NCBI RefSeq assembly: GCF_006345805.1
Contig: NW_021836641.1
Coordinates: 1-23,568 of the forward strand
DNA: 23,568 bases
Origin: Octopus sinensis
Lineage: Eukaryota
Reading direction: 5' to 3'
Shown: positions 4,632-22,893 of the stretch, in pieces
Position numbering within the stretch: position 1 is the stretch's first letter
Layout of the letters: each line of letters begins with the position of its first letter
The notes under the pieces: generated by a model
Databases searched by the model: none
The model's input: only the letters and a program-made list of their open reading frames with translations
What the model was told of the DNA's origin: nothing
Position numbers and translations under genes: made by a program

Positions 4632-5402
4632 CCCTATGTGCGACATTTAACTGGGGTTTCACATGAGCAATGATGCAACATTCCATGTGCATATTACCAA
4701 GATGGCAAAACTGTGCAGGCGAGTGGCTGGCTGGATTTTGAGGACATTCAGAACCAGGAAAAGGGAGACCCTGCTACTCTTAAGGAAGACTTTCGTTCTC
4801 AGCCGCTTGGACTACTGCTCCCAACTATGGTCCCCAGGGAGTGTAAAACAAACTGTGAAACTCGAAACAATCCAGCCCCAATACACAAAGAAGATTGACT
4901 CGATGCAAAAGATAGGCTACTGGGAGCGGCTAAAAGAGCTGAGTCTCTATTTCCTGGAGAGAAGACAAGGGAGATATGCGGTGATACCTATTTGGAAGAT
5001 CTTGGGGAGTTTAGCTCCCAATTTTGTAATTGACAGCTATACCAATCATCGAACTGGACGGAACTGCATCATACCAAAGATCCCGTCTTCCCTAACTAAA
5101 ATAAGGACACAGTACTGCAATAGTCTAAGTTTCAAGGGCCCGCAATTGTTCAATATCCTTCCAAGCAACCTTAGGGATCTACATGGTGTTGATGTGGAAG
5201 TTTTCGTGGAACGTCTGAACAGGTTTCTATCTGAGATACGAGATGAACCCACATCGCGGCCGGAGACGCAAAGAAGAGCAGCTCCGTCCAGCTCGCTGTT
5301 TCACCAAAAACAAAACCGGAAACAGCACCGACTAACGACAGGTGGTGCACCAGCATGACCTCTGCCCTGAGGCAAAACCAATAAATGATAAAAAAAGATA
5401 GA
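4632..5402 (+). mobile_element. 5'-truncated CR1/L2-group LINE: ORF2 C-terminus (ORF 4663-5358) plus 3' tail
   Basis: ORF motifs GWILRTFRTR, LSRLDYCSQLWSP, YWERLKEL.LY.LERR, SFKGPQLFNILP are typical of the post-RT region of this group. An A-rich tail follows at ~5375-5402. Confidence 0.9.
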
Positions 5403-7675: not shown

Positions 7676-7816
7676 GGCGCAGGCCTGGCTGTGTGGTAAG
7701 GAGCTTGCTTCCCAACCACAAAATTCCGGGTTCAGTCCCACTGCGTGACACCTTGGTCATGTGTCTTCTACTATAGCCTCAGGCCGACCCAAACCTTGTG
7801 AATGGATTTGGTACAT
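7676..7816 (+). mobile_element. SINE family 1, tRNA-derived head
   Basis: GGCGCAGGCCTGGCTGTGTGGTAAG (A box) ... GGGTTCAGTCCC (B box), colinear with 22508-22605. Confidence 0.88.
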
Positions 7817-9745: not shown

Positions 9746-10145
9746 ATGCGTACATACATACATACATATACATAATATATACCTACACACATAAATGTGT
9801 ATGTTTATATATATATATATAATATATATATATAATATATAATAATTATATATATATATCAGTAATAATATAGGGTGAAATAATTAATTGGAATATCATT
9901 AATTTCACAAGTAGATTTCGGATGTAAAAGCCTCATTCGAGAAAGAAAGTTTAAGTAATGCTAAGTAATTAAGGGTTTAGCACGTTTTGCCTCACCACAC
10001 ACCGAATTTAGAAATAGCAGTCAAAGAGTTATAGCTATTTTCTACTAAAAGGGAGATCTCAGTAAAACCACAGCACTTGAAAGGCAAACACAGGACAGGC
10101 AAGAGAGAAAGAAATGACGGCAATCTATCATACAATTTTAAGTCA

Positions 10146-10235
10146 CCTACGGACGTACGTTTCGAAATTAAGTTTAGGAAAGCATAAGAATTAGATAATT
10201 ATGTCTTACCCAACTTCTTTTCTCATCAGCGTAGG
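10146..10235 (-). ncRNA. Type I hammerhead ribozyme HHR-1 (minus-strand copy)
   Basis: Reverse complement of 10624-10714 apart from a 1-nt indel in stem II. Predicted GUC cleavage between 10152 and 10151. Confidence 0.88.
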
Positions 10236-10623
10236 ACACTACAATTATGAATAATTGTATATTAAATTTCGCGGTACTAGAAAGAACTCATCTCAACTCA
10301 GTATCAGAGCGAGCTAAAGCGGTAAGTAATCACCAAATTCAAAGTGTGAATGAAAGTTTGTGTCACCAACCCCCTCCCACCAGCGTGCAGCCAAGACAAG
10401 ATGTTGTGGTCATTTACTGGGATGAAATATGGTTATCAGTAATAATATAGGGTGAAATTAATTAATTTGGAATAATCATTAATTTCACCAAGTAGATTTC
10501 GGCATGTAAAAGCCTCATTCGAGGAAAGTTTATGTAATACTAAGTAATTAAGGGTTTAGCAACGTTTTGCCTCACCACACACCGAATTTAGAAATAGCAG
10601 TCAATTATTCATAATTGTAGTGT

Positions 10624-10714
10624 CCTACGCTGATGAGAAAAGAAGTTGGGTAAGACATAATTATCTAATTCTTATGCTTTCCTAAAACTTAATTTCGAAA
10701 CGTACGTCCGTAGG
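10624..10714 (+). ncRNA. Type I hammerhead ribozyme HHR-1 (plus-strand copy)
   Basis: Stem I CCTACG (10624-29) / CGTAGG (10709-14); core CTGATGA (10630-36); long imperfect stem II G10637-C10696 (GAAA.AAGTT...CATAA / TTATG...AACTT.TTTC); GAAA (10697-700); palindromic stem III ACGTACGT; cleavage triplet GTC ending at 10708. Confidence 0.9.
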
Positions 10715-10929
10715 TGACTTAAAATTGTATGATAGATTGCCGTCATTTCTTTCTCTCTTGCCTGTCTGTGTTTGCCTTTCAAGTGCTGTGGTTTTACTGA
10801 GATCTCCCTTTTAGTAGAAAGAATAGCTATAACTCTTTGACTGCTATTTCTAAATTCGGTGTGTGGTGAGGCAAAACGTTGCTAAACCCTTAATTACTTA
10901 GTATATATATATATATATATATATATACA

Positions 10930-10985: not shown

Positions 10986-11489
10986 AATCTTTAAAGAAGT
11001 AAAAATAGGAAATGGATAATGTAGTCTTAGATATACTGTATGATGAAGAGGCGGTATGGTCATGGCTGGGACGACTTTGATCATAAATCTACTCAATGGA
11101 TTCAGACCTTGGAATAAACATTAACAACATCAACAAAACAAGACGAAAGGGATTCTCTTGGAGGTAATTCAAATCTGCTGGAAATACCAGTTAAATCTGT
11201 CTTGAAAAAGGAAGGTTGCTTTTGACAATATAGTCGTAAATATGTTTTGCCTTGGGCCCTTAAGCTTTTGTTGGTATCGTAGTATGGGGATGGGTTGTGA
11301 CAGGCAAGAAGCCATCCTTCTCCAGGCCTAATGGCAGCCGATGTATTCTAGGGACAGCAAGAGAGACAGAGACAGAGACAGACATACAGACAGACAGACA
11401 TACAGACAGACAGACAGACAGAGACAGAGAGAGAAAGAGAGAGAGAAGTGGGGAGGGAGAAAGACAGACGAAAAGAAGAAAGGTATGAA

Positions 11490-11585: not shown

Positions 11586-11984
11586 CACAGTAACTACAGG
11601 AACGTACCGGCTAGAAATAGCAGTCAAATTTCCCTCACATCCAGCGCTTAGGGCAGCAAAGGAACAGGAACACAATAGAAATAGTAAATGGTTTACGGTA
11701 CAAAAGAAAATCACTTTAAACTTACTAAAATAATATTCGAAGAGGTTACTATAATCGAAATATAATCTCTAAGTGTTCATAGCATCGTACTGAAGATCTG
11801 ATCAAGGACTTTGCTATGAAAAAAAAAAGTCGGAGAACGCTTTTGAAATATGAACAAAGTGCGGGTATACAAAAATGGACAATATTTCACATCTTTCTGT
11901 TGGTTTTGTTTCGTTTGGAAAAATAAAAATTTATTTTATGGTTTATTATTGTTTATATTTTGAATTACATATATATGAGGGCAC

Positions 11985-17130: not shown

Positions 17131-17476
17131 TATTATGGCTGCCCCTCGTTATCGAGTATGGCCATTGCACGAAGCTTAACTGTTACTGGTGCTGTGATCA
17201 AATGTGACTTTTTAGCCCAGCTAAAGATCTACAATGTCTTGTACAAAATTGGCAACTAAAACCTTTACCGGTAAAAGCCGGCTGTAGTTGTAACTGGGTT
17301 TCATGTACCTTTGCATGTCGTTTAAGTCCTCCTGCCGAATTACACTCTCTTCCACATGCCTGACAGATATGATTAGTATGGTGTGTTACACCACCACCAG
17401 TGGCCAGGTTGTCACTCATCTGTCTCGCTTTATGACTACAAAGATGACTCTTGAGTCCAGCTTTACTGAGGCAGGG

Positions 17477-17480
<4 letters not shown>
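17131..17480 (-). mobile_element. RTE-clade LINE 3' end encoding C2H2-type zinc fingers
   Basis: CLSKAGLKSHLCSH, CQACGRECNSAGGLKRHAKVH and CQFCTRHCRSLAGLKSH repeat the C..C.R.C.S..GL.SH motif of RTE ORF2 C-termini. A short 3' UTR ends GAGGGGCAGCCAT-AATA. Confidence 0.72.
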
Positions 17481-17524
<44 letters not shown>

Positions 17525-18440: not shown

Positions 18441-19386
18441 GGCATCTTTTCAGACACTGATTAATTATAAGTGACTGAAGCGTTACACACACACACACAC
18501 ATTTAAAAACATACATACACACATACATACATACACACATACATACATACATAATCACCTATCAATCCCTCTATCTGTCTGTCTATGTATCTGTTTCTCT
18601 ATCTCTTTGTCTTTCTCTTTCCCTTTCTCTTACACTTTATTTTTTGGGGTTTTTAAACTTATATTTATGTAACTTCATTATTTATTTGTTTCTCATTTTA
18701 TCGATAAGAAACTAAAACGGGAAGCACAGTAGTGACACGGTTCACCAGTCTATGCGTTCGCCTCTAACCCAAAGTATAGCCTTTCATTCTTACAGTATTT
18801 CTTTATTTTATTTCGTTTCTGTTCCTTAAGCGAGACAGTCAACCCAATTTCAGTGAATAGATGCCAGCAGATATTTGAAACGTGCCTCGTTTGATATCAG
18901 GGTTTACAAAATCAACCAACTATATTATAGACTACCTTCTCGCTTGATTGATTCCGTTGAATATTGACTCACTGGCCGAAGGCACAACGTGAAACAAGCA
19001 GAAGGTAGGTGCGAATTGGAAGTGTGTGCGCATGCCCGTCGCTAAGAGAGAGCACTAGACAGCTCTATTCAATGGTACACCCTCAAATTTGCAGTGGTAC
19101 ACTTATTTTGAAACTTTACAAATTTGTAACCACCCAGAATGATCTGAAGCCGTCCCCACCCACAAAGCACCAAAATTTGTTGACGGATCTGGTTATGCTG
19201 CTATTCTATATTTATACTTTAACCTGATGGTGCTTTGTTTTACTGGGAAGCAATACTACTGTATTGCACTATTTAATCATATTTTTCTTTGAAAACTTTT
19301 TCACTGTTCTCGGTCTGTTAACGGCCAGGCATTCAGACGAGTATGCTAGCATTGATGTAGAAATATTTGAAATTTTGTCCAGGTGA

Positions 19387-19460
19387 ATCTAGCTGAAGAG
19401 AACTAATCAAATTTACGTTAACAAACGTAATTTGGAAAGTTCGAAATCTAGGTCCTAGAT
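19387..19460 (+). ncRNA. Type I hammerhead ribozyme HHR-2
   Basis: Stem I ATCTAG (19387-92) / CTAGAT (19455-60); core CTGAAGA (19393-99); stem II GAACT/AGTTC extended by CAAATT-T-ACGTT/AACGTAATTTG; GAAA (19443-46); near-palindromic stem III ATCTAGGT; cleavage triplet GTC ending at 19454. Confidence 0.85.
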
Positions 19461-19655
19461 GATCCACATCTTAGTTGTATATTTATTTAACGTTCTTCCT
19501 ACAGGTGAAACTTTTTATGTTTGCCGCCCGCAAACATCTTTGCTAGTATAGATATACAGTGAAGCTTTACTATAGCGTCGTATATTATCAACTGCTATTT
19601 CCAGTAAATATTGGTGCATTGTTGTACCACTATCTTATCTTATATATATATATAT

Positions 19656-19696
<41 letters not shown>

Positions 19697-19699
<3 letters not shown>

Positions 19700-19890
19700 T
19701 CCAAACATGAACAAAGAGATAACACAACAACGCGAGGATGTGGAACAAGTATAGTGTTATTGGACGCTCGGAAAAGGAAAGAAAGGAAGATTTAACGTTT
19801 CGAGCGGAGCTCTTCCTCAGAAATATAGAAAAAGGAAAGGTCCAAAGGGAAGACAGAGAAAGAAAATCGCCAACGATACACATGCGGTCA
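19697..19890 (-). mobile_element. Probable PLE terminal-repeat relic carrying a minimal HHR-like motif
   Basis: Lies between (GA)n and (TA)n tracts; related in layout to 16786-16990. Confidence 0.5.
19790..19824 (-). ncRNA. Minimal type I HHR-like motif
   Basis: ATTT-CTGAGGA-A-GAGC-TCC-GCTC-GAAACGT-T-AAAT: core intact with an extra A after A9, 4-bp stems I and II, ACGT palindrome. The U at position 17 is a weaker cleavage base. Confidence 0.55.
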
Positions 19891-22507: not shown

Positions 22508-22893
22508 CCACATGGTTCCGGGTTCAGTCCCACTGCGTGGCACCTTGGGCAAGTGTCTTCTACTTTAGCCTCGGGCCGACCAAAGCCATGTGAGTGGATT
22601 TGGCAGACGGAAACTGAAAGAAGCCCGTCGTATATATATGTATATGTATATATATGTATGTGTGCGTGTATACGTTTGTGTGTCTGTTTGTCCCCCCAAC
22701 ATCGCTTGGCAACTGATGCTAATGTGTTTACGTCCCCGTCACTTAGCGGTTCAGCAAAAGAGACCGATAGAATAAGTACTAGGCTTTTAAAGAATAAGTC
22801 CTGGGGTCTATTTGCTCAACTAAAGGCGGTGCCCCAGCATGGCCACAGTCAAATGACTGAAACAAGTAAAAGAGAATGAGAGTAAAAGAGTAA
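22508..22893 (+). mobile_element. SINE family 1, near full length (A box missing)
   Basis: B box GGGTTCAGTCCC, internal TA/TG microsatellite, tail GGCGGTGCCCCAGCATGGCC...ACTGAAACAAGTAAAAGAG with (AGTAAAAGAG)-like terminal repeats. Confidence 0.9.

What the first reader, a model, noticed from the sequence alone, without database searches (positions are those of the whole stretch)
19380..19509. Hammerhead ribozyme inside a 122-nt intron-shaped module bounded by an exact 8-bp direct repeat
Seen: CAGGTGAA at 19380-19387 and again at 19502-19509. The first gives a donor CAG|GTGAAT (intron start 19383). The second is preceded by branch-like TTTAAC (19486-91) and TTCTTCCTACAG| (intron end 19504). 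Splicing 19383-19504 would restore exactly one CAGGTGAA, and HHR-2 (19387-19460) lies wholly inside. Established: introner-type insertions create introns using duplicated target AG/GT, and some Penelope-like elements retain spliceosomal introns. Inference: either a self-cleaving mini-intron (a splicing-versus-cleavage switch) or a small HHR-carrying insertion with an 8-bp TSD that is invisible after splicing. No coding frame is restored, and the branch point is rather close to the acceptor.
Basis: partly seen in the sequence, partly recalled or inferred. Interest (0 to 1): 0.8.

Follow-up and report, generated by a model that had tools for sequence, protein, structure and literature searches.

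The report
Solo Penelope-type hammerhead, intron shape probably coincidental
A real hammerhead ribozyme motif of the kind carried by Penelope-like retroelements sits here inside a longer non-coding repeat unit, and the 8-base repeat that makes it look like a tiny intron is most likely a coincidence, not a splice module or an insertion scar.

Summary
CAGGTGAA is exact at 19380-19387 and 19502-19509. A type I hammerhead (HHR) lies at 19387-19460, with Rfam RF00163 at 33.8 bits against a gathering score of 34 and an intact catalytic core; it would cleave after C19454.

- The HHR has a 2-bp helix III capped by the palindromic loop CUAG. This is the dimer- or protein-dependent type known from Penelope-like elements (PLEs), and it stands alone here.
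- The sequence downstream of it shares exact blocks at matching offsets with the tail of a second HHR unit in this window (9958-10257 and 10602-10904). TGTTTGCC lies at +57/+54 and ACTGCTATTTC at +130/+125. Only 2 of 5000 shuffles reach this.
- Both tails are 180-190 nt long and end at a (TA)n microsatellite.
- The second CAGGTGAA therefore lies inside a longer unit, so it is not the target-site duplication of a 114-bp insert.
- The related unit has no GT or AG signals at the matching positions.
- A flanking 8-bp repeat of this kind arises by chance about 2% of the time.
- The splice-like signals are decent (top 1% in the window), but there is no exon, no coding frame and no other copy.

Best reading: a solo PLE-derived, retrozyme-like HHR unit. 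No family copies could be retrieved, so the intron and insertion readings are unlikely but not excluded.

The parts
19380..19387 (+). First CAGGTGAA copy. It is donor-like (CAG|GTGAAT) and ends one base into helix I of the hammerhead.
   Evidence: donor score ranks 12th of 1429 GT sites
19387..19460 (+). Type I hammerhead ribozyme motif (HHR-2). Helix I is AUCUAG (19387-92) paired with CUAGAU (19455-60). The core is CUGAAGA (19393-99). Helix II is GAACU/AGUUC plus a 12-bp extension (19400-19442). GAAA lies at 19443-46. Helix III is A-U and U.G with the palindromic loop CUAG (19446-53). The cleavage triplet GUC lies at 19452-54, with the cut after 19454.
   Evidence: Rfam RF00163 at 33.8 bits, E 6e-7; descriptor scan; folds
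19446..19460 (+). Near-palindrome AUCUAGGUCCUAGAU, made of the helix III segment plus the 3' strand of helix I. It drives intermolecular pairing and competes with the active fold.
   Evidence: RNAcofold dimer at -46.9 kcal/mol against 2 x -17.4 for the monomers; the canonical HHR fold is -11.9 against a monomer minimum free energy of -17.4
19461..19640 (+). 180-nt tail of the HHR-bearing unit. It is collinear with the 190-nt tail of the HHR-1 unit (10715-10904) and ends at a (TA)n microsatellite.
19493..19501 (+). It has a counterpart (TTTCTTTCTCTCTT) at the same offset in the HHR-1 unit.
19502..19509 (+). Second CAGGTGAA copy, acceptor-like (CTACAG|G). It lies inside the tail. The homologous stretch of the HHR-1 unit reads TTGCCTGTCTG, with no AG.
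19517..19537 (+). Hairpin AUGUUUGC-CGCCC-GCAAACAU, which contains the conserved block TGTTTGCC (19518-25; +57 after helix I, against +54 in HHR-1).
19591..19601 (+). Conserved block ACTGCTATTTC (+130 after helix I, against +125 in HHR-1). The same 11-mer is also at 10011(-), 10591(-), 10840(+) and 11614(-).
19641..19697 (.). (TA)n followed by (GA)n microsatellite abutting the end of the unit. The HHR-1 unit likewise abuts a (TA)n at 10905.

Best explanation
HHR-2 is a solitary Penelope-type hammerhead. It has a minimal helix III with a palindromic loop and depends on a dimer or a protein for activity. It is embedded in a non-coding, HHR-bearing retroelement unit of at least about 250 nt, running from about 19365 or further upstream to about 19640. 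That unit resembles a PLE pseudo-LTR or a solo non-LTR retrozyme monomer, and it sits next to a (TA)n microsatellite.

Shown here:
- The ribozyme motif.
- Its architecture.
- The collinearity of its tail with a second HHR unit in the window.

Inferred:
- The unit was made by PLE-type target-primed reverse transcription. In that process the reverse transcriptase starts a short distance downstream of the HHR, so 5'-truncated copies keep the HHR plus a tail.
- The lone copy is now an inert relic that cleaves poorly, if at all.
- The two CAGGTGAA copies are a chance repeat internal to the unit, or straddling its 5' edge. The module looks like an intron only because the repeated word contains AG|GT and a pyrimidine-rich stretch of the unit happens to precede the second copy.
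For: - HHR motif: Rfam RF00163 at 33.8 bits, E 6e-7. Three descriptor hits against 0.025 expected.
- Helix III of 2 bp with a CUAG loop matches the description of metazoan and PLE HHRs that work as dimers and are inactive as single motifs (PMC4209133). The PAc PLE hammerhead cleaves only with its protein (PMC11167929).
- The active fold is not the minimum free energy fold, and a palindrome drives dimer pairing.
- The tail of HHR-2 shares exact blocks with the tail of HHR-1 at matching offsets. TGTTTGCC lies at +57 versus +54 and ACTGCTATTTC at +130 versus +125. Only 2 of 5000 shuffles and 1 of 786 real-sequence controls reach this.
- The combined pattern TGTTTGCC-N55-75-ACTGCTATTTC occurs 3 times against 0.00 expected.
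- Local alignment of the two tails gives p about 0.01.
- The tails are 180 and 190 nt long, and both end at (TA)n.
- The HHR-1 locus shows the inverted, 5'-truncated, head-to-head arrangement typical of PLEs (PMC8557442). PLEs also have a bias for microsatellite targets (PMC8557442).
- At the positions homologous to the second repeat, the HHR-1 unit has a pyrimidine tract but no AG|G.
- Chance level of the direct repeat is about 2%.
Against: - The collinearity statistic was devised after I saw the BLAST matches.
- The global alignment of the two tails is not significant (z = 1.4).
- The ACTGCTATTTC motif also occurs at two loci without an HHR.
- No PLE reverse transcriptase or GIY-YIG open reading frame is in the window.
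- HHR-1 itself gets no Rfam hit.
- A 2% coincidence for the repeat is not negligible evidence for a real duplication, and the splice-like signals are in the top 1% of the window.
- No other copy of the HHR-2 family could be found, so the unit boundaries are inferred from one distant relative.
Confidence: 0.6

Rival explanations
1. A 114-bp HHR-carrying mini-insertion (19388-19501) flanked by a genuine 8-bp target-site duplication CAGGTGAA. It would be an extremely 5'-truncated PLE or retrozyme copy made by PLE-type integration.
For: - The exact 8-bp direct repeat has about a 2% chance level.
- PLE insertions in Adineta vaga carry 8-, 9- and 10-bp duplications (PMC3846280).
- The PLE reverse transcriptase initiates internally, a few tens of nt downstream of the HHR, and copies are often 5'-truncated (PMC11167929). 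A short piece made of HHR plus tail is therefore mechanistically possible.
- The flanks are AT-rich, as are PLE endonuclease targets.
Against: - Sequence beyond the second repeat (19518-25 and 19591-601) is collinear with the tail of HHR-1 at the same offsets from the ribozyme. The HHR and the sequence outside the supposed insert therefore belong to one unit.
- Removing 19388-19501 would leave a tail without its HHR.
- No empty site or second copy was found.
Confidence: 0.15
2. A functional 122-nt spliceosomal mini-intron (19383-19504) containing the hammerhead, in which cleavage and splicing compete. It might be a PLE-derived introner.
For: - Donor CAG|GTGAAT and acceptor TTCTTCCTACAG|G rank in the top 1% of GT and AG sites in the window.
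- Branch-like TTTAAC lies 14 nt from the AG.
- PLEs are known to retain introns. In D. virilis Penelope an intron ends at the 5' end of helix I of the HHR (PMC4209133, PMC8557442).
- Transposons of many classes can create introns (PMC12130899).
Against: - No exon evidence: stops in every frame, no protein-family match, and microsatellite flanks.
- The donor has A at +5, and the branch point is close to the acceptor.
- The signals follow largely from the repeated word itself.
- The related HHR-1 unit has neither signal at the homologous positions.
- A lone HHR of this type is expected to be nearly inactive (PMC4209133).
- The main text of the introner survey PMC12130899 never mentions Penelope-like elements.
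- The position weight matrices were written from memory and serve only for ranking.
Confidence: 0.05
3. A remnant of rolling-circle or tandem copying: a 122-nt unit copied 1.07 times, so that the 8 bases are terminal redundancy of a very small HHR circular RNA.
For: - Non-LTR retrozymes are tandem HHR units thought to move through circular RNAs (PMC7229834).
- A repeat spaced exactly one unit apart is what a slightly over-length copy would give.
Against: - Known metazoan units are about 170-400 nt (PMC7229834), not 122 nt.
- Similarity stops after 8 bases, or 10 of 11.
- An RNA processed by the ribozyme would start at 19455, not at 19380.
- The tail continues collinearly with HHR-1 past the repeat.
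Confidence: 0.03
4. The first CAG (19380-82) is the acceptor of an upstream PLE 5'-UTR intron, as in D. virilis Penelope, where the intron ends at helix I. The second copy is irrelevant.
For: - An AG lies 4 nt before helix I here (TTTTGTCCAG|GTGA-AUCUAG) and 3 nt before helix I in HHR-1 (AATTGTAG|TGT-CCUACG).
- There is a precedent in PMC4209133.
Against: - The acceptor score is poor (-0.6; about 146 of 1197 AG sites score as well or better).
- There is no convincing donor in the 100 nt upstream.
- Two cases of an AG within a few bases are expected by chance fairly often.
Confidence: 0.05

Closest known systems
Hammerheads of Penelope-like elements, as found in shrimp, Drosophila, rotifer and mosquito PLEs, with a small palindromic helix III (Cervera & de la Pena 2014, PMC4209133)
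   Same: - Type I topology, a complete core and the G10.1-C11.1 pair.
- A long helix II.
- A helix III of 1-2 bp with a palindromic loop (CUAG).
- Predicted dependence on dimerisation.
- Genome-dispersed single motifs.
- The neighbouring locus shows the PLE-style inverted, 5'-truncated arrangement and a microsatellite target.
   Different: - No PLE open reading frame (reverse transcriptase or GIY-YIG) is in the window.
- There is no second pseudo-LTR copy next to HHR-2.
[quoted passage not shown]
- Helix II carries an unusually long 35-nt insert.
Metazoan non-LTR retrozymes and their solo monomers (PMC7229834; bioRxiv 10.64898/2026.07.22.740005)
   Same: - A short (about 250-400 nt), AT-rich, non-coding unit with one type I HHR.
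- Monomeric dispersed copies are described, and these elements are related to PLE pseudo-LTRs.
   Different: - Retrozymes are defined by tandem arrays and by canonical HHRs with loop-loop contacts that cleave well.
- Here there is a single unit with a minimal HHR.
- Circular RNA could not be tested.
D. virilis Penelope 5'-UTR intron next to the HHR (PMC4209133; PMC8557442)
   Same: A splice-type signal lies immediately 5' of helix I of a PLE hammerhead.
   Different: - In Penelope the intron ends at helix I and lies upstream of the ribozyme.
- Here the proposed intron would begin there and contain the ribozyme.
- There is no evidence of transcription or splicing.
Introners, which are transposon-generated introns (PMC12130899; PMC9860276)
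   Same: A short insert-like module bounded by a duplicated word that supplies AG|GT.
   Different: - Introners are recognised as many near-identical copies that form annotated, spliced introns in genes.
- Here there is one copy and no gene, and the second repeat lies inside a longer element.
- The main text of that survey never mentions Penelope-like elements.
Intronic hammerheads of amniotes (from my own knowledge: de la Pena & Garcia-Robles 2010)
   Same: An HHR lying within an intron-like interval.
   Different: - Those are conserved, efficient ribozymes in long introns of known genes.
- They are not mini-introns bounded by direct repeats.

Membership tests
Hammerhead ribozyme, type I (Rfam RF00163) | Conserved catalytic core: CUGANGA, GAAA, A15.1-U16.1 and a cleavage triplet NUH | tested here: met
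   CUGAAGA at 19393-99, GAAA at 19443-46 and GUC at 19452-54
Hammerhead ribozyme, type I (Rfam RF00163) | Three-way junction with base-paired helices I and II, open at helix I | tested here: met
   Helix I is 6 bp and helix II is 5 bp plus an extension
Hammerhead ribozyme, type I (Rfam RF00163) | Score at or above Rfam's gathering threshold | tested here: inconclusive
   33.8 bits against 34.0. It was missed in the whole-window gathering search. E = 6e-7 in the local search.
Hammerhead ribozyme, type I (Rfam RF00163) | Self-cleavage at the predicted site | not testable with these tools
   This needs in vitro transcription. The prediction is poor monomer activity (PMC4209133).
Penelope-like-element hammerhead | Helix III of 1-2 bp capped by a short palindromic loop, allowing a dimeric active form | tested here: met
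   A-U and U.G pairs with loop CUAG. An intermolecular duplex is predicted.
Penelope-like-element hammerhead | Located in the pseudo-LTR of an element that encodes a reverse transcriptase and a GIY-YIG endonuclease | tested here: not met
   There is no such open reading frame in the 23.5-kb window, and the flanks are full of stops. Only a solo non-coding unit is present.
Penelope-like-element hammerhead | PLE-style insertion architecture: 5' truncation, inverted or partial-tandem copies, microsatellite target | tested here: inconclusive
   It is clear for the related HHR-1 locus. For HHR-2 only the adjacency to (TA)n and the tail collinearity are seen.
Metazoan non-LTR retrozyme | Tandem repeats of 170-400-nt units, each with a type I HHR | tested here: not met
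   There is a single HHR in this orientation and no tandem copy. At most it is a solo monomer.
Metazoan non-LTR retrozyme | Expression as linear and circular monomer RNAs | not testable with these tools
   No transcriptome data are available.
Spliceosomal intron or introner | GT...AG boundaries with consensus context, a branch point and a pyrimidine tract | tested here: met
   CAG|GTGAAT, TTTAAC and TTCTTCCTACAG|G. Both sites are in the top 1% of the window on a rough position weight matrix.
Spliceosomal intron or introner | Lies in a transcribed exon, so that splicing joins functional sequence | tested here: inconclusive
   There is no open frame, no protein-family hit and microsatellite flanks. 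Transcription is not testable.
Spliceosomal intron or introner | Many near-identical copies forming introns, with duplications outside the element | tested here: not met
   No other copy was found in the window or in the searchable collections. The second repeat lies inside the stretch collinear with HHR-1.

The most novel reading that the evidence does not exclude
The HHR-2 family of PLE-derived units carries a genuine spliceosomal mini-intron that encloses its hammerhead. A transcript would then be either spliced, which removes the ribozyme, or self-cleaved. This would be the first ribozyme-containing introner-like module derived from a Penelope-type element.
Probability: 0.04. Interest if true: 0.75.

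Novelty: new member of a known kind. Interest (0 to 1): 0.2.

Why it matters
As it stands, this is one more dispersed Penelope-type hammerhead in a repeat-rich animal genome, which is a known and very abundant class. It has modest value as an example. It shows that a ribozyme missed by Rfam's gathering threshold can be placed in a longer unit by collinearity with a second unit in the same window. It also shows how a repeated word containing AGGT can mimic an intron or an insertion scar.

Suppose the splice reading were confirmed by RNA-seq and by conservation across family copies. It would then link self-cleaving ribozymes, PLE intron retention and transposon-driven intron gain, which would be of real interest.

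Tried and rejected
Searches for other copies, all negative:
- The window itself by BLASTn.
- JGI metagenome contigs with two HHR patterns.
- IMG/VR viral contigs.
- GTDB genome contigs.
- The 5.8-billion-protein collection, queried with the 44-aa spurious open reading frame that spans the HHR.

Attempts to identify the source genome:
- An exact look-up of the 231-aa open reading frame found nothing.
- A homology search found only relatives at 63% identity or less on short ENA contigs. Same-species DNA could therefore not be fetched.

Other checks that led nowhere or were rejected:
- Pfam on seven long open reading frames gave only sub-threshold zinc-finger hits.
- Six-frame translations of both HHR loci are full of stops, so I did not scan them.
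- Rfam does not detect HHR-1 at E <= 1, although HHR-1 passes the descriptor and folds as expected.
- A hammerhead-like core at 19786-19820 (-) was rejected: it has no helix I and no Rfam hit.
- The other two CAGGTGAA copies (16827 +, 6059 -) have unrelated flanks.
- The upstream regions of HHR-1 and HHR-2 show no significant similarity.
- A possible partial-tandem edge was not significant: TGGTGCxTTGTTxTAC at 19228 and 19612.
- No tRNA-derived SINE head was found.
- The first CAG as an acceptor of a Penelope-like upstream intron was considered and set aside, because the acceptor score is poor and there is no donor.

Full report
**Observation**

- CAGGTGAA is exact at 19380-19387 and at 19502-19509.
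- The first copy reads CAG|GTGAAT.
- The second copy is preceded by TTTAAC (19486-91) and TTCTTCCTACAG (19493-19504).
- The interval 19383-19504 is 122 nt.
- The repeat extends to 10 of 11 bases and no further.
- The other two CAGGTGAA copies in the window (16827 +, 6059 -) have unrelated flanks.

I estimated the chance level by asking how often an exact direct repeat of at least 8 bp brackets a 74-nt core, within 15 nt upstream and 70 nt downstream. This occurs in 1.7% of dinucleotide shuffles of the locus and at 2.4% of non-repetitive positions of the window. That is unusual but not decisive, because the bracket was defined after the repeat was seen.

**The ribozyme**

At gathering threshold Rfam finds nothing in the window. 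A local search gives Hammerhead_1 (RF00163) at exactly 19387-19460, with 33.8 bits against a gathering score of 34 and E = 6e-7.
- All core positions are present: CUGAAGA, GAAA and the A15.1-U16.1 pair.
- The cleavage triplet is GUC, with the cut after C19454.
- Helix I is 6 bp (AUCUAG/CUAGAU).
- Helix II is GAACU/AGUUC, continued by a 12-bp extension.
- Helix III is only A-U and U.G, closed by the palindromic loop CUAG.

A descriptor scan of my own finds this motif and two more, at 10624-10714 (+) and 10235-10146 (-). That is three hits against 0.025 expected in 200 shuffles.

A helix III of 1-2 bp with a palindromic loop is the hallmark of metazoan and Penelope-like-element (PLE) hammerheads.
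- These work as dimers and show no detectable cleavage as single motifs (PMC4209133).
- The one PLE hammerhead studied with its protein cleaves only when the protein is present (PMC11167929).

The folding results agree with this.
- The canonical fold of HHR-2 is -11.9 kcal/mol, against a monomer minimum free energy of -17.4.
- The segment AUCUAGGUCCUAGAU is a near-palindrome that dominates the predicted dimer (-46.9 kcal/mol).
- A lone copy is therefore a poor candidate for an efficient switch.

**What it belongs to**

The window is saturated with microsatellites and decayed repeats. It holds no PLE reading frame.

The other two hammerheads lie in a 303-nt unit that is present in several forms.
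- A full copy lies at 10602-10904 (+).
- A second full copy lies at 9958-10257 (-), 98% identical to the first.
- A 68-nt 5'-truncated inverted copy (10537-10604) abuts the + copy head to head.
- The + copy ends at a (TA)n tract.

This is the arrangement described for PLEs: inverted 5'-truncated copies, partial tandems and microsatellite targets (PMC8557442).

The region after HHR-2 resembles the region after HHR-1 in a collinear way.
- TTGTAT lies at +15 versus +11 after helix I.
- A pyrimidine tract lies at about +33-41 versus +35-48.
- TGTTTGCC lies at +57 versus +54.
- ACTGCTATTTC lies at +130 versus +125.
- The tails are 180 and 190 nt long, and both end at (TA)n.

I counted exact matches of at least 7 nt at offsets that agree within 6 nt.
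- The observed total is 19 matched bases.
- Only 2 of 5000 shuffles and 1 of 786 real-sequence controls reach this.
- The pattern TGTTTGCC-N55-75-ACTGCTATTTC occurs three times in the window against 0.00 expected.
- Local alignment of the two tails gives p about 0.01.

There are caveats.
- I devised the statistic after seeing the matches.
- The global alignment is not significant (z = 1.4).
- The 11-mer also occurs at two loci without a recognisable hammerhead.
- Rfam does not detect HHR-1.

I take the homology as probable, at about three chances in four.

**Consequence for the module**

If HHR-2 and its tail form one unit, as HHR-1 and its tail do, several things follow.
- The second CAGGTGAA (19502-09, +42 to +49 after helix I) lies inside the unit. 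It cannot be the downstream half of a target-site duplication of a 114-bp insert.
- Compared with HHR-1, there is no extra piece between the repeats.
- The pyrimidine tract read as a polypyrimidine tract is a shared feature of the two units.
- At the homologous place HHR-1 reads TCTCTTGCCTGTCTG, with no AG. It also has no CAG|GT in front of helix I.

**The intron reading on its merits**

I ranked the splice-like sites with rough position weight matrices written from memory, used only for ranking.
- The donor ranks 12th of 1429 GT sites on the + strand.
- The acceptor ranks 14th of 1197 AG sites.

The signals are therefore respectable. Most of the score lies in the repeated word itself. There are further weaknesses.
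- The donor has A at +5.
- The branch A is 14 nt from the AG.
- Every frame around the module is closed.
- Nothing here shows transcription.

PLEs do retain introns. In D. virilis Penelope an intron ends at the 5' end of helix I (PMC4209133, PMC8557442). That intron lies upstream of the ribozyme.

Read that way, the first CAG would be an acceptor. Its score is poor and no donor lies upstream.

Introners are recognised by many spliced copies in genes (PMC12130899). Here there is a single copy and no gene.

**The insertion reading on its merits**

PLE insertions do make 8-10-bp duplications (PMC3846280). The PLE reverse transcriptase starts about 85-92 nt downstream of the hammerhead cut (PMC11167929). 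Very short copies consisting of HHR plus tail are therefore plausible in principle. The collinear tail beyond the second repeat argues against that reading here.

**Search for relatives**

No other copy was found in any of these places:
- the window;
- JGI metagenome contigs;
- viral contigs;
- prokaryotic genome contigs;
- the large protein collection, queried with the spurious open reading frame across the ribozyme.

The source genome is not represented in the protein collection. The best reverse-transcriptase hit has 63% identity. The decisive comparison of family copies therefore could not be made.

**Verdict**

- The hammerhead is real and of a known kind.
- It most likely sits in a solo PLE-derived, retrozyme-like unit (confidence 0.6).
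- The 8-bp repeat is most likely fortuitous, and the intron shape is a by-product of the repeated word.
- The mini-insertion (0.15) and the functional mini-intron (0.05) remain possible until the source genome and its transcriptome are consulted.

Noticed in passing
window 9857-10904: A complex hammerhead-bearing repeat. A full 303-nt unit lies at 10602-10904 (+), and a 98% identical inverted copy lies at 9958-10257. A 68-nt 5'-truncated inverted copy (10537-10604) abuts the + copy head to head. There is also a 94% direct repeat (9857-10024 and 10434-10604). The structure ends at (TA)n. This is the arrangement described for Penelope-like elements. Its hammerhead (10624-10714 and 10235-10146) passes a descriptor and folds as expected, but gets no Rfam hit at E <= 1.
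   Followed up: partly
window 10011(-), 10591(-), 10840(+), 11614(-), 19591(+); one mismatch at 11181(-): The 11-mer ACTGCTATTTC lies within a motif of about 17 nt, TTGACTGCTATTTCTAG. It occurs 6 times (allowing up to 1 mismatch) against 0.59 expected. The loci at 11614 and 11181 have no recognisable hammerhead upstream. It may be a conserved 3'-region signal of these elements or a separate small repeat.
   Followed up: partly
window 19517-19537: A perfect 8-bp hairpin (AUGUUUGC-CGCCC-GCAAACAU) lies 63-83 nt downstream of the hammerhead cut. The position is similar to that of the stem-loop where the Anolis PLE reverse transcriptase starts (PMC11167929). The hairpin itself is not conserved in HHR-1.
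   Followed up: no
window 7716-7811 and 22508-22603: A 96-nt dispersed repeat with 87.5% identity, possibly a SINE-like element. No tRNA-like head was found by ARAGORN.
   Followed up: partly
window 4663-5358 (+): A 231-aa open reading frame that looks like the C-terminal part of a non-LTR-type reverse transcriptase. Homologues carry PF00078. The best match has only 63% identity and lies on a short metagenome contig. The source genome is not in the protein collection.
   Followed up: partly
window 17198-17524 (-): A 108-aa open reading frame with sub-threshold C2H2 zinc-finger matches. It runs into a (TA)n tract.
   Followed up: no
window 19228-19243 and 19612-19627: TGGTGCTTTGTTTTAC and TGGTGCATTGTTGTAC (14 of 16 identical) lie 384 nt apart. 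This could mark a partial-tandem edge of the HHR-2 unit, but it is not significant on shuffles.
   Followed up: partly
whole window: The microsatellite load is extreme, with (TA)n, (CA)n, (GA)n, (GATA)n and (AAT)n. This produces many spurious sub-threshold microRNA hits in Rfam at relaxed thresholds.
   Followed up: no
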